From assembly GCF_902713615.1 (NCBI RefSeq), contig NC_052160.1, positions 47,024,719 through 47,088,718 of the forward strand: DNA of 64,000 bases. Reading direction: 5' to 3'. This DNA is from Scyliorhinus canicula. Taxonomy: Eukaryota. The notes under the pieces were generated by a model. It worked only from the letters and a program-made list of their open reading frames with translations, did no database searches and was not told the origin of the DNA. This document shows positions 13,446 through 21,957 of this stretch, piece after piece (within the stretch, counting starts at the first letter, position 1; every line of letters begins with the position of its first letter). Position numbers and translations under genes: made by a program.

Positions 13446-14731
13446 TCCCTGAAATCCTCTGATATTTTAAGGTTCTGCCTCTTTTTTACTCAACTCTGCA
13501 ACCAGAAGGAATAGATTCTTTCTATCAACTTTTTCACCCCAATTAGGTTATCTGGTATCTAAAGGAAACATAAACCTAGCAGATGAACCTGTGCTCATAA
13601 TTTAATTCATTTCAACCAGCTATCTTTTCCTGATCTTGAATACAATGAAATCAGGTCCTCAATTTGTTGCAAAATATTTGCACTTTCCACAACTTGTTAC
13701 TTTAAGATGGTTTTATTTTGTGTGGTAAACCTTGGTAAGTTGAATCACTCCATTCTCATGTAGGTATGCTAAAAAGGATACCGTTTCAATTAGATTTTTG
13801 TCCAAGAGGGAATTTATGCTGCAGAGAGCTGAGACGGGGAAGAATGCTGATGTGCTTTTTTAAAAAAAAATGATTTGTAATAGAGATCAGAAAGGCACTA
13901 GACTATATTTTGTTTTCCTTTATTACCTTTGATTTATAGTCTATTACAAAAGCAAAATTCTGAAGGTGCTGTAAATCTGAAATAAAAATGCTGGAAATAG
14001 TACAGTCTGCAGGTCCAGCAGCATATGTGGAAAGAGCAACAGTTAATGTTTCAGGCCCATGACTGTTCAAGTTAAAAGTCATCTGAAATGTTAATTCTGT
14101 TTAATGTACTTCTCTTAAATGGGTTGCTGCTAGTTTATGTAAAACACTTTTAGAAAGGAGCATATTTTCTTCCTTTTAGGGTAAATATATATACACCAGA
14201 AGAAATAACAGTAAAGCTACGGATTGGAAGGAAATAACTGTACAATTACTGATGCCCTAGTATACCTTAATTTCCATTGTTTTCTGATAACACCCAAAAC
14301 CTGTTGTTTGTATTGAATCCCAACCATTGTGACATAATTAAGTATGCAGGTATCAGTTTATAAACATATACATTATTCTGAATGTCGTCCTTTAATACGG
14401 GCAATACCAGTAGAATTCTGGAAGAGAAAGCTGAGTTGGAGAATTAAATGTGTGCCTTGTGGCACCCTAGGTTGTTGCTCCCAGTTAGCTGCTTTGGTAC
14501 ATCTCCTGGACAATAACTAAATGTTAATAACAATTAGATTCTCTGGGAAGCCAGGGAGGAGATTGCAGAGCCTTTGTCCTTGATCTTTATGTCGTCTTTG
14601 TCGACAGGAATAGTGCCGGAAGACTGGAGGATAGCAAATGTTGTCCCCTTGTTCAAGAAGGGGAGTAGGGAGCGCGGAGGTCGCAGGGAGAGGGGCTACC
14701 GCAAGCGGTGGACAGCAGGAGGAACAGCCCC

Positions 14732-14733
14732 CG

Positions 14734-14772
<39 letters not shown>

Positions 14773-17840: not shown

Positions 17841-20800
17841 ATGGTTAACCCCACAGGAGCAAGGGGGCAGAAGCCCCCCACCAGAATAGTCACCTGGAAC
17901 GTAAGGGGACTTAACGGCCCAGTGAAGAGATCTAGAGTCCTCACCCACCTTAGAAACATGAGGGCCGACATAGTCTTCCTCCAAGAGACGCACTTGAGGG
18001 AGCGGGACCAACTGCGGGTAAGAAAGGGCTGGGTGGGACAAACCTATCATTCCTGTTATGGGGCAAGGGCCAGGGGGGTGGCGATCCTGATTGGCAAGAG
18101 GACAATGTTTAGGGCGACAAAGACGGTTACGGACCCAGGGGGACGGTATGTCATGGTCAGCGGGGCCCTGGATGGGGCGCCGGTAGTTCTAGTTAACGTG
18201 TACGCGCCCAACTGGGACGACACGAGCTTCATCCAAAAGACCATGGCAGAAATCCCGGACATAGCGACGCACCGACTAATCATGGGGGGGGACTTCAACT
18301 GTGTACAGGACCCAACGACGGACAGATCAAACCCCAGAACGGGGAAAACCTCAAACATGGCAAGGGAACTCAGCCACTATATGGAGCAGATGGGAGCAGT
18401 AGACCCCTGGAGATTCGCCCACCCGGGGGAGAAAGAATTCTCTTTCTTCTCCCCAGTACACAACGTGTACACCAGAATTGACTTCTTTGTGGTGGGGAAA
18501 ACGGTGCTTCCAGAGATAGACAAGGTGGAATACTCCGCAATTGTGATATCAGACCACGCTCCACACTACATGGATGTGCGGCTAGAGACGGGAAGGGCCC
18601 AGCGCCCCAAATGGAGGTTGGACGGTGCCTTACTAGCTGACAAGGCCTTCAGCGAAAGGATAGCGCAGGCCATAGCGGAGTACACTGAGATCAACCAAAA
18701 CGGGGAGGTCTCACCCTCCACGTTCTGGGAAGCGCTTAATGCCGTACTAAGAGGGGAAATCATAGCCTACAAAGCGCAAAGAGATAGGGAGGAAAGGGTG
18801 GCTAGGCAGAAGCTGGTCGACTCCATACTGGAGGTAGACCATAAATACTCCGAGGCCCCGACTGTAGAACTCCTGGCGGAGAGAAAAGAATTACAAAGGA
18901 ACTTTGACCTGCTCTCCACCAGGAAAGCAGTACACCAACTCCGCCAGGCACGCGGGGCCCTATACGAACACGGAGACAAAGCCAGCCGCCTGTTGGCCCA
19001 CCAGCTGAGAAAGCAGGCAGCCAGCAGAGAAATCGCGCAAATCAGAGATACCAGAGGCACGTTGGAAACAGAACCAGAGAAGATTAACAAAACCTTCAAG
19101 GCCTTCTACCAAGAGCTGTACACCTCAGAGCCCCCAACGGGGAAGGCTGGGATGAACCGGTTTCTTGACGGACTGGACATACCAGTTGTGGGAGAGGGCA
19201 GAAAACGGGATCTGGAAGCACCACTAGCACTGGGAGAGATCATGGACAGCATTAGCTCCATGCAGGCGGGGAAGGCGCCGGGACCGGACGGATTCCCGGC
19301 GGACTTCTACAAAAAATTTGCGACAGCGCTGGCCCCGCACATGCGGGAGATGTTCACAGACTCGCTAGCTAGGGGCACGTTGCCACCCACGTTAGCACAG
19401 GCCTCAATCTCGCTGATACCTAAGAAAGACAAAGACCCAACGGAATGTGGGTCATACAGACCCATATCTCTGCTGAATGCAGACGCCAAAATACTGGCCA
19501 AAATCCTAGCCAAAAGGCTAGAAGACTGTGTACCTGAGGTGGTCACAGAGGACCAGACGGGCTTTGTCAAAGGTAGACAGCTGACCGCGAACATCAGGCG
19601 CCTGCTGAACGTGATAATGACCCCCTCCGGGGAGAGAACACAAGAGGTGATCGTCTCCCTGGACGCAGAAAAGGCCTTCGACAGAGTCGAATGGAAATAC
19701 CTCATAGAGGTACTGGAGCGGTTCGGGCTTGGAACAGGGTTCACCGCTTGGGTAAAGCTCCTGTACAACGCTCCCATGGCGAGTGTACAGACCAACAATA
19801 CCAACTCCCAATACTTCCAGCTGCACAGGGGCACCAGACAAGGATGCCCACTGTCCCCGCTGCTGTTCGCACTAGCAATCGAACCGCTAGCAATCGCGCT
19901 CAGGGCAGCAAAAAATTGGAGGGGGATCCGAAGGGGAGGTAGAGAGCACAGAGTCTCACTCTATGCGGATGATCTGCTCCTCTATATCTCGGACCCACAA
20001 AGCAGCATGGACGGAATCATCGCGCTCCTGAAAGAGTTTGGAGCCTTCTCGGGCTACAAACTCAACATGAGCAAAAGTGAGATCTTCCCATTACACCCGC
20101 AAGGGGGGGGGGGGGGCAGCACTAAAGGGGCTGCCGTTCAAACAAGCCCGACATAAATTCCGCTACCTGGGGATCCAAATAGCCCATGACTGGAAAGGGA
20201 TCCACAAATGGAACCTCACCAGCCTGACGGAGGAAGTTAAAAAGGACCTGCAAAGATGGAACACACTCCCGCTCTCCCTCGCGGGGAGAGTTCAGACGAT
20301 CAAAATGAACGTACTGCCCAGGTTCCTCTTCCTGTTTAGATCCATTCCGATCTACATCCCCAAGGCCTTTTTCAAAGCGCTGGACAAACTCATCATGGCG
20401 TTCGTATGGGGGGGTAAAAATGCTAGGATCCCAAAGAAGGTCTTACAAAAAACAAAAACCAGGGGAGGGTTAGCCCTCCCGAATCTACAATTCTACCACT
20501 GGGCAGCAACAGCCGAGCGAGTAAGGGGATGGATCCAGGAGCCAGAAGCTGAGTGGGTGCGTGCGGAGGAGGCCTCCTGCATGGGAACCTCCCTCCGGGC
20601 CCTCGCCACGGCAGCACTCCCATCCCCACCCAAAAAACACTCCAGCAGCCCAGTGGTGACAGCCACCCTCCAATCCTGGAACCAACTGCGGCAGCAACTT
20701 GGCCTGACCAAAATGTCGAACAGGGCTCCCATCTGCAACAACCATAGGTTCAAACCAGCACTGACCGACGCCACCTTCAAAAGGTGGAGGCAGGACGGGG

Positions 20801-21669
20801 GGACACTGACAGTCAGGGACCTATACACGGACGACAGGATCGCAACACTGGACGAACTGACAGAGAAATTTCAGCTAGCTGGGGGGAACGAGCTACGGTA
20901 CCTGCAGCTCAAAAACTTCCTACGAAAGGAGACAAGGACGTACCCACAACCGCCACGACAGACACTACTGGAAGACCTACTGGACGCAAGTATCCTAGAG
21001 AAAGGGAACTGTAGTGACATGTATGACCGACTGGTAGATAGGGACGACACCGTACTGGACGCAACAAGGAGGAAATGGGAGGACGACCTGGGGATGGAGA
21101 TCGGGTGGGGACTCTGGAGCGAAGCACTGCATAGGGTCAACTCCACCTCCACGTGCGCAAGGCTCAGCCTGACGCAACTAAAAGTGGTACATAGGGCCCA
21201 CTTAACAAGAACCCGTATGAGTAGGTTCTTCCCGGAGGTGGAAGACAGATGTGAACGGTGCCAAAGAGGCCCGGCCAACCACGCCCACATGTTCTGGTCC
21301 TGCCCCAGACTCGTGGAGTACTGGACAGCCTTCTTCGAGGTAATGTCCAAAGTGGTGGGAGTGAGGGTGGAGCCATGCCCGATAGTGGCGGTCTTCGGGG
21401 TTTCAGAACAGCCAGATCTATTCCTGGGGAGGAGGGCGGATGCCCTTGCCTTTGCCTCCCTGATCGCCCGCCGTAGAATCCTGTTTGGCTGGCGGTCAGC
21501 AGCACCGCCCAGAGCTGCGGACTGGCTGTCCGACCTCTCGGAATCTCTCCAAATGGAGAAAATCAAATTTGCCATCCGAGGGTCGGACGACGGCTTCCAC
21601 AGAACGTGGGAGCCATTCATGCGACTGTTCCGGGACCTATTTGTGGCCAATGTACAAGAGGAAGAATAG
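17841..21669 (+). CDS. L1 ORF2p (APE endonuclease, RT, C-terminal cysteine-rich domain); single frameshift at G14 run 20103-20116
   Basis: TWNVRG, FLQETH, GGDFN, SDH; KAPGPDG, QGCPLSP, YADD; CERC...HMFWSC. Removing one G gives one ~1275-aa ORF. Confidence 0.93.
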
Positions 21670-21957
21670 TCGGGGGAAGGCAGCGGGAGGGGGGGGGGGG
21701 GGGCTACAGGTTCGTTACGGGGGTTCGATGGCTAGCTAAGGCCCAAAACCAAGCTAAATAAACATGTTGAGGGGGGGGGGGGGGGGGGGGGCGCAGTTAC
21801 TACTACGAAGATGCTTACCTGTAAATATGTGTGTTAATTTTTGCGTGTTTGTTTTTGTTTGTTTTTTTTTTTCTCTCTCCTAACAATTTGTAATTTGTTC
21901 AATATAAAATACGAAAACTGAATAAAAACATTTATAAAAAAAAAAGAAGGGGAGTAG

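What the first reader, a model, noticed from the sequence alone, without database searches (positions are those of the whole stretch)
14669..21943. Potentially retrotransposition-competent L1, broken only at one homopolymer
Seen: perfect 14-bp TSD, many undecayed CpGs, uninterrupted ORF1, all ORF2 catalytic motifs, and one frameshift in a G14 run where G13 (or G10) restores a ~1275-aa ORF. Inference: a very recent insertion whose frameshift may be a sequencing/assembly artefact, making it a candidate active and polymorphic L1.
Basis: partly seen in the sequence, partly recalled or inferred. Interest (0 to 1): 0.7.

Follow-up and report, generated by a model that had tools for sequence, protein, structure and literature searches.

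The report
Young shark L1, ORF2 frame-broken
This is a recently inserted, full-length L1 jumping gene in a shark genome whose only visible defect is a one-base frame slip at a run of 14 G's. It is an ordinary young LINE, and the assembly alone cannot show whether this copy can still jump.

Summary
A 7,275-bp L1-clade LINE (14669-21943, + strand) lies between perfect 14-bp target-site duplications. Removing it restores an uninterrupted CR1 reverse-transcriptase reading frame.

The element has:
- a tandem-monomer, poly-C-rich 5'UTR
- an open 341-aa ORF1 (coiled coil, RRM, CTD)
- a 774-nt spacer
- an ORF2 colinear with human and fish ORF2p, with all EN and RT catalytic motifs and the CCHC motif kept
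- an AATAAA signal and an A8-10 tail

ORF2 is split into 754 and 517 homologous codons by a +1 frame change. The change is confined to nt 20097-20130, which contains G14 (20103-20116). No other stop or frameshift occurs in 4.8 kb of coding sequence, so neutral decay is below roughly 0.6-1.3%.

"Young" is well supported. "Artefact, therefore active" cannot be tested here, because no other copy, read or population data were reachable. A G14 run is both error-prone in long-read assemblies and hypermutable in vivo. A dead L1 in the same window carries a roughly 40-nt G-run block inside its ORF2. I put about 25% on this copy being truly in frame.

The window is elasmobranch (catshark by earlier notes), not human. 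Young L1s are expected in non-mammalian vertebrates, so this is a new member of a known kind. The scan has noted young L1s elsewhere in this genome.

The parts
14655..14668 (+). 5' target-site duplication AAGAAGGGGAGTAG, part of the host CR1 RT ORF
   Evidence: D9
14669..16040 (+). 5'UTR of 1372 nt. It holds C38 (a C-rich stretch of 44 nt), an 8/46-nt array (14802-15070), 60-nt monomers x6.5 (15102-15496), 38/26-nt monomers (15512-15741), C25, and then an A/T-rich stretch with A14 and (AT)n. It is the presumed internal promoter (inferred).
   Evidence: The monomers occur nowhere else in the window.
16041..17066 (+). ORF1, 341 aa, open. It has a basic N-terminus, a coiled coil with a 21-nt x3 heptad repeat (16376-16438), an RRM and a CTD (type II L1 ORF1p).
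   Evidence: human L1ORF1p 2ykp E 8.8e-5, residues 178-319; fish L1 ORF1 / 'L1 transposable element RRM domain' proteins, 44-48% identity.
17067..17840 (+). Inter-ORF spacer, 774 nt, 67% GC and purine-rich, with G13 at 17483-17495. A ~78-nt unit is repeated about 2.5 times directly before the ORF2 ATG (17640-17840).
17841..20102 (+). ORF2 part a, 754 homologous codons: APE endonuclease, tower/linker, RT fingers and palm as far as ...SEIFPLHPQ.
   Evidence: PF03372 6.5e-16, PF00078 3.5e-41; 55% identity, 0 gaps over 739 aa to P0003; human ORF2p E 8e-140, residues 8-742.
20103..20116 (+). G14 homopolymer. The +1 frame change lies within 20097-20130, and this run is the only low-complexity sequence in that interval.
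20116..21669 (+). ORF2 part b (+1 frame), 517 homologous codons plus stop: end of the RT palm, thumb, wrist and C-terminal domain with the CCHC motif.
   Evidence: 42% identity, 1 gap, P0003 766-1267; human ORF2p 755-1237, E 3.7e-37; zf-RVT 2e-4.
21670..21943 (+). 3'UTR with G15 (21689-21703) and G21 (21771-21791), AATAAA at 21921-21926, and an A8-10 tail from 21936.
21944..21957 (+). 3' target-site duplication AAGAAGGGGAGTAG
   Evidence: D9

Best explanation
A full-length L1-clade non-LTR retrotransposon (vertebrate L1 type, type II ORF1) inserted by target-primed reverse transcription into an older CR1 copy of an elasmobranch (catshark) genome, very recently on an evolutionary scale.

Shown:
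- the whole 7,275 bp went in as one unit between 14-bp TSDs
- the target was ...TTGTTC|AAGAAG...
- ORF1 is open
- ORF2 is colinear with active-type ORF2p and keeps every catalytic motif
- the only lesion is a +1 frame change confined to a 34-nt interval that contains G14

Inferred:
- The tandem-monomer 5'UTR is the family's internal promoter.
- The frame change is a length change of the G-run.
- As assembled, the copy would make ORF1p and a 771-aa EN-RT fragment lacking thumb, wrist and C-terminal domain, so it is not autonomous.
- The run is at once the most mutable and the most error-prone site of the element, so its true length in the animal is undetermined. I put about 60-65% on a real slippage event (at reverse transcription or afterwards) and 35-40% on a miscounted run. 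I put about 25% overall on the real allele being in frame.
For: - TSD and restored CR1 frame.
- Domains.
- Colinearity with intact fish ORF2 of 1271 aa: 739 aa with 0 gaps, then 503 aa with 1 gap. Colinearity with human ORF2p 8-742 and 755-1237.
- In an alignment with 40 intact homologues, the two pieces end and start 3 columns apart.
- 190 of 198 and 77 of 86 near-invariant columns are kept, and most deviations are conservative.
- ORF1 is homologous to L1ORF1p.
- A single disabling lesion in 4,836 coding nt gives a 95% upper bound of 0.6-1.3% neutral divergence.
- Homopolymer census, and the G24+G15 block inside the ORF2 of a decayed L1 in the same window.
- Published catshark repeat landscape: LINEs make up most recently active elements (PMC11979771).
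- Non-mammalian vertebrates carry several low-copy L1 lineages (PMC5203782).
Against: - No second copy of this family could be obtained, so identity to a family consensus, the usual G-run length and the native 5' end are all unknown.
- The 5'UTR ends in an A14/(AT)n stretch before ORF1. A composite or 5'-transduced leader is therefore not excluded.
- The age bound rests on assumed indel-to-substitution ratios.
- The species and the assembly method are taken from earlier scan notes and from a 69% TE hit to S. torazame, not proven.
Confidence: 0.85

Rival explanations
1. One reading: the G-run is miscounted by the assembler or polisher. The real allele is in frame, and the copy is an intact, potentially retrotransposition-competent and polymorphic L1.
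For: - It is the only lesion in 4.8 kb of coding sequence, and it sits exactly on a 14-nt homopolymer.
- The element has 23 runs of 10 nt or more, so run lengths are generally insecure.
- A CLR-based assembly, if this is sScyCan1.1.
- Homopolymer-length errors in repeats survive short-read polishing (PMC8812927).
- Earlier unchecked notes of this scan report 1-nt homopolymer frameshifts in otherwise functional immunoglobulin genes of this genome.
Against: - A miscount restores the frame only for one direction or size of error.
- Long G-runs also mutate quickly in vivo, and the window holds a dead L1 with a roughly 40-nt G-run block inside ORF2.
- No reads were available.
- Open ORFs alone do not show activity.
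Confidence: 0.25
2. Slippage-tolerant L1: the G-run is a conserved feature of the family. It encodes a short poly-Gly loop between the RT palm and thumb. Its length toggles by transcriptional, reverse-transcriptase or replication slippage, so out-of-frame genomic copies still yield some in-frame RNAs or progeny.
For: - The run lies in a length-variable, unconserved loop: 10 residues in fish homologues and 12 in human.
- Sense-strand G-runs recur in the spacer and 3'UTR, and at the ORF2 end of a second L1 lineage.
Against: - There is no evidence that the run is conserved in other copies.
- No slippery-site or stimulatory structure was tested.
- Slippage at G-runs of this kind is not established for Pol II. 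This is pure inference.
Confidence: 0.06
3. Composite or transduced element: the GC-rich tandem arrays (14669 to about 15800) are not the native L1 5'UTR. They are flanking sequence of a source locus carried in by an upstream transcription start, so the copy may lack its own promoter.
For: - An A14 plus (AT)n stretch (15925-15975) separates the arrays from ORF1.
- The arrays are found nowhere else in the window.
Against: - One TSD pair encloses everything.
- Tandem-monomer 5'UTRs are a known L1 promoter design (mouse L1; established knowledge).
- No other copy was available to compare.
Confidence: 0.1

Closest known systems
Vertebrate L1 (LINE-1) lineages of teleost fish, e.g. ORF2 proteins P0001-P0009 and 'LINE-1 reverse transcriptase-like protein' of Xyrichtys novacula and Triplophysa tibetana
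   Same: ORF2 has the same length class (1269-1274 aa) and is colinear with almost no gaps. It has the same EN, RT and CCHC organisation, a type II ORF1, a poly(A) tail and TSDs.
   Different: Only 47-55% (ORF2) and 44-48% (ORF1) amino-acid identity, so this is a distinct elasmobranch lineage. It has a much longer inter-ORF spacer (774 nt) and is GC-rich, with many long G/C homopolymers.
Human L1 ORF2p / L1ORF1p (PDB 8sxt, 8uw3, 1vyb, 2ykp)
   Same: E 8e-140 and 3.7e-37 over residues 8-742 and 755-1237. All catalytic residues and the Cys-rich motif are kept. The ORF1 RRM and CTD are recognisable.
   Different: The ORF1 N-terminus and coiled coil are unrelated in sequence. Pfam Transposase_22 does not reach threshold. 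The 5'UTR is made of tandem monomers, as in mouse L1 and unlike human L1. The A-tail is very short.
Mouse L1 (TF/GF/A) monomeric 5'UTR
   Same: The promoter region is built from tandem monomers upstream of a non-monomeric stretch and ORF1 (established knowledge; the arrays are seen).
   Different: The monomers are unrelated, 8/46, 60 and 38 nt instead of about 200 nt. There are three different arrays, each punctuated by poly-C. Promoter activity was not tested.

Membership tests
L1 clade of non-LTR retrotransposons | N-terminal APE-type endonuclease with its catalytic residues | tested here: met
   PF03372 E 6.5e-16. N, E, Y, D-N, D and D-H all align to human L1 EN.
L1 clade of non-LTR retrotransposons | Reverse transcriptase with the F/YADD active site | tested here: met
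   PF00078 E 3.5e-41. DAEKAFD and YADD align to the human motifs.
L1 clade of non-LTR retrotransposons | C-terminal Cys-rich (CCHC) segment of ORF2 | tested here: met
   CERCQRGPANHAHMFWSC aligns to the human motif. The zf-RVT hit has E 2e-4 but lies below Pfam's cut-off.
L1 clade of non-LTR retrotransposons | ORF1 with coiled coil, RRM and CTD (type II) | tested here: met
   PDB L1ORF1p hits at E 9e-5 to 4e-2 over residues 178-321. Coiled-coil-type Pfam hits over residues 73-173. Homologues are named L1 RRM-domain proteins. No Pfam Transposase_22 hit.
L1 clade of non-LTR retrotransposons | Poly(A) 3' end and target-site duplication from TPRT | tested here: met
   AATAAA, an A8-10 tail and a 14-bp perfect TSD. 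The empty site restores the CR1 frame.
Retrotransposition-competent ('hot') L1 copy | Both ORFs uninterrupted | tested here: not met
   As assembled, ORF2 is split by a +1 frame change at 20097-20130. The true run length cannot be tested here.
Retrotransposition-competent ('hot') L1 copy | Near-identity to other young copies or the family consensus; presence/absence polymorphism | not testable with these tools
   No other copy in the window, in the protein collections, in the metagenome scan or in scan notes searched by sequence.
Retrotransposition-competent ('hot') L1 copy | Functional internal promoter and measured mobility | not testable with these tools
   This needs a reporter assay and a retrotransposition assay.

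The most novel reading that the evidence does not exclude
The long G-run in the palm-thumb loop of ORF2 is a maintained family feature and not a lesion. It would act as a hypermutable on/off switch: the run length toggles the ORF2 frame during transcription, reverse transcription or replication. Individual genomic copies would then flip between autonomous and non-autonomous states, as in bacterial phase variation but in a vertebrate LINE.
Probability: 0.06. Interest if true: 0.6.

Novelty: new member of a known kind. Interest (0 to 1): 0.25.

Why it matters
If the copy, or an in-frame allele of it, is active, it would be a source element for ongoing L1 mobilisation in a cartilaginous fish, where LINE biology has been described mostly for CR1 and L2. 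Earlier unchecked notes of this scan propose that poly(A)-tailed SINE subfamilies in this genome use an L1 partner, so a live L1 lineage would be relevant there.

The practical lesson is general. In long-read (CLR) assemblies, the "intact versus dead" status of young, homopolymer-rich retrotransposons cannot be read from the assembly.

Tried and rejected
- Other copies of the family, to measure divergence and read the G-run length elsewhere:
  - blastn and tblastn of the element against the rest of the window found only two distant, decayed L1 lineages at 32-56% aa identity.
  - Word-index protein searches with ORF2 part a and with ORF1 found nothing above 55% and 48% identity.
  - An exact-pattern scan of metagenome contigs across the G-run found nothing.
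  - Scan notes searched by sequence were blank.
- Species check with a gypsy PR-RT ORF from the window: the best named hit was Scyliorhinus torazame at only 69%. This is consistent with a catshark but is not proof.
- Rfam on 14000-22500: no family.
- The inverted motif bracketing ORF2 that was reported for another L1 of this genome (note s1-213855) is not present here.
- The long ORFs across the GC-rich 5'UTR on both strands have no Pfam hit and are composition artefacts.
- The two ORF2 pieces were always searched separately.
- The window is not human.
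Full report
**What is there**

The stretch 14669-21943 (+ strand, 7,275 bp) is 60% G+C and sits in 38-45% G+C surroundings. It is bounded by two identical 14-nt copies of AAGAAGGGGAGTAG, at 14655-14668 and 21944-21957 (family D9). The chance of such a match at a fixed pair of positions is 3.7e-9.

Joining the left flank, one copy of the repeat and the right flank gives one continuous CR1-type reverse-transcriptase reading frame...IVPEDWRIANVVPLFKKGSRDNPGNYRPVSLTSVVGKMLEK.... The repeat is therefore a true target-site duplication, and the whole 7.3 kb entered an older CR1 copy as a single unit. The top-strand target, TTGTTC|AAGAAG, corresponds to a bottom-strand nick after a pyrimidine run. 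That is the L1-endonuclease style of cleavage (established knowledge of L1 TPRT).

**Anatomy**

- **5'UTR (14669-16040).** It consists of a short unique head, a C-rich stretch of 44 nt, three different tandem arrays, and an A/T-rich stretch before ORF1. The arrays have units of 8/46 nt, 60 nt x6.5 and 38/26 nt, and each unit carries a poly-C tract. These monomers occur nowhere else in the window.
- **ORF1 (16041-17066, 341 aa).** It is open. Pfam's L1 ORF1 models do not reach threshold. Residues 178-321 match the RRM and CTD of human and mouse L1ORF1p structures, at E 9e-5 to 4e-2. Residues 73-173 give coiled-coil-type hits. The nearest database proteins are fish "L1 transposable element RRM domain-containing" proteins at 44-48% identity.
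- **Spacer (17067-17840, 774 nt).** It is purine-rich. It ends in a ~78-nt unit repeated about 2.5 times just before the ORF2 ATG.
- **ORF2.** It is read as two pieces: 17841-20156 (771 aa; Exo_endo_phos 6.5e-16, RVT_1 3.5e-41) and 20077-21669 in the +1 frame (530 aa; weak zf-RVT).
- **3'UTR.** It carries G15 and G21 runs, AATAAA at 21921-21926 and a tail of only 8-10 A.

**The break**

Against an intact 1271-aa fish ORF2 (P0003), piece a aligns over 739 residues with no gap, up to ...SEIFPLH. Piece b aligns over 503 residues with one gap, from LPF... to the C-terminus. Against human ORF2p the two pieces cover residues 8-742 and 755-1237.

In an alignment with 40 intact homologues, the last homologous residue of piece a and the first of piece b are three columns apart. 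The frame change is thus confined to nt 20097-20130, a loop of variable sequence between the RT palm and thumb. The only unusual sequence there is G14 at 20103-20116. I searched the pieces separately and built no joined version.

**Integrity otherwise**

The alignment to human ORF2p shows every endonuclease catalytic residue, the RT DAEKAFD and YADD motifs and the Cys-rich motif in place. Of 284 columns that are at least 95% invariant in 40 fish homologues, 267 are kept. Most of the 17 deviations are conservative.

**Age**

No other copy of the family could be found in the window, the protein collections, a metagenome pattern scan or the scan's notes by sequence. Divergence from a consensus therefore cannot be measured.

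An internal bound is possible. With 3.1% of substitutions creating stops in these frames and 0.05-0.15 indels per substitution, one disabling lesion in 4,836 coding nt gives a 95% upper limit of 0.6-1.3% neutral divergence. That supports a recent insertion.

The element's o/e is 0.60 against 0.25-0.37 in the host CR1, but an obviously dead L1 in the window still has 0.52.

**Artefact or mutation?**

*For an artefact:*
- The lesion lies on a 14-nt homopolymer in an element that has 23 runs of 10 nt or more.
- Earlier notes of this scan call the genome a catshark. A gypsy ORF in the window is closest to S. torazame, at 69%.
- If this is the S. canicula reference, it was built from PacBio CLR reads with Arrow and FreeBayes polishing (PMC11979771).
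- Homopolymer-length errors in repeats are the typical residue of such assemblies (PMC8812927).
- Unchecked notes report similar 1-nt homopolymer frameshifts in otherwise functional genes of this genome.

*For a real change:*
- G/C homopolymers are common in this window: 8 G/C runs against 2 A/T runs outside the element.
- A decayed L1 at 40733-44762 carries a G24+G15 block as extra sequence inside its endonuclease domain. G-runs in L1 ORF2 therefore do change length in vivo.
- A run of 14 should mutate far faster than the rest of the element (inference from microsatellite behaviour).
- Only one direction or size of miscount would restore the frame.

I therefore put about 35-40% on a miscount and about 25% on the true allele being in frame. 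The assembly alone cannot decide this.

**Comparison and novelty**

The element meets every structural criterion of the L1 clade that I tested (see the membership table). As assembled, it fails the "both ORFs intact" criterion for a competent copy.

Multiple low-copy, young L1 lineages are the rule in non-mammalian vertebrates (PMC5203782). The catshark genome paper attributes most recent TE activity to LINEs. This scan has already noted a young intact L1 on another piece of this genome (s1-213855), although the motif described there is absent here.

This is therefore a new member of a known kind, of modest interest. The one less ordinary possibility is that the G-run is a maintained, slippage-prone frame switch. 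That idea is unsupported at present (about 6%).

**Housekeeping**

The window is elasmobranch, not human. It contains no N runs.

Noticed in passing
window 14728-15785: The L1 5'UTR holds 16 poly-C tracts of 11-38 nt, each embedded in one of three different tandem monomer arrays (8/46 nt, 60 nt, 38/26 nt). The monomers occur nowhere else in the window.
   Followed up: partly
window 17640-17840: A ~78-nt unit is repeated about 2.5 times immediately upstream of the ORF2 start codon, with a conserved core CCCCGGAGNGCAGGG. It sits at the end of an unusually long 774-nt inter-ORF spacer that contains several upstream ATGs.
   Followed up: partly
window 21689-21703 and 6746-6757: Two L1 lineages that share only about 32% ORF2 identity both carry a long G-run at or just after the end of ORF2 (G15 and G12). 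This may be a conserved G-rich 3'UTR element, comparable to the G-rich tract of mammalian L1 3'UTRs.
   Followed up: no
window 42413-42452: A decayed L1 (40733-44762) has a G24+G15 block as roughly 40 nt of extra sequence inside its endonuclease domain, between residues that align to ORF2 positions 165 and 174.
   Followed up: partly
whole window: Outside the element, mononucleotide runs of 10 nt or more are mostly G/C (8) rather than A/T (2). This is the reverse of the mammalian pattern.
   Followed up: no
window 6183-6885: A 5'-truncated L1 of another lineage, with an A7 tail, is inserted into another CR1 copy. Short A-tails seem typical of L1 insertions here.
   Followed up: no
window 16376-16438: The ORF1 coiled coil contains a 21-nt unit (one heptad, KILEAQG-like) repeated three times.
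   Followed up: no
window 35038-36465 (-): A gypsy-type protease-RT ORF of 476 aa. Its best named relative is a Scyliorhinus torazame protein at 69% identity, followed by ray (Hypanus, Mobula) proteins.
   Followed up: partly
window 22375-22405: The host CR1 RT frame is itself broken by a 1-nt shift at GTTTGGGG, within the conserved ...GSVLGPLLF... motif. The host copy was therefore already decaying.
   Followed up: no
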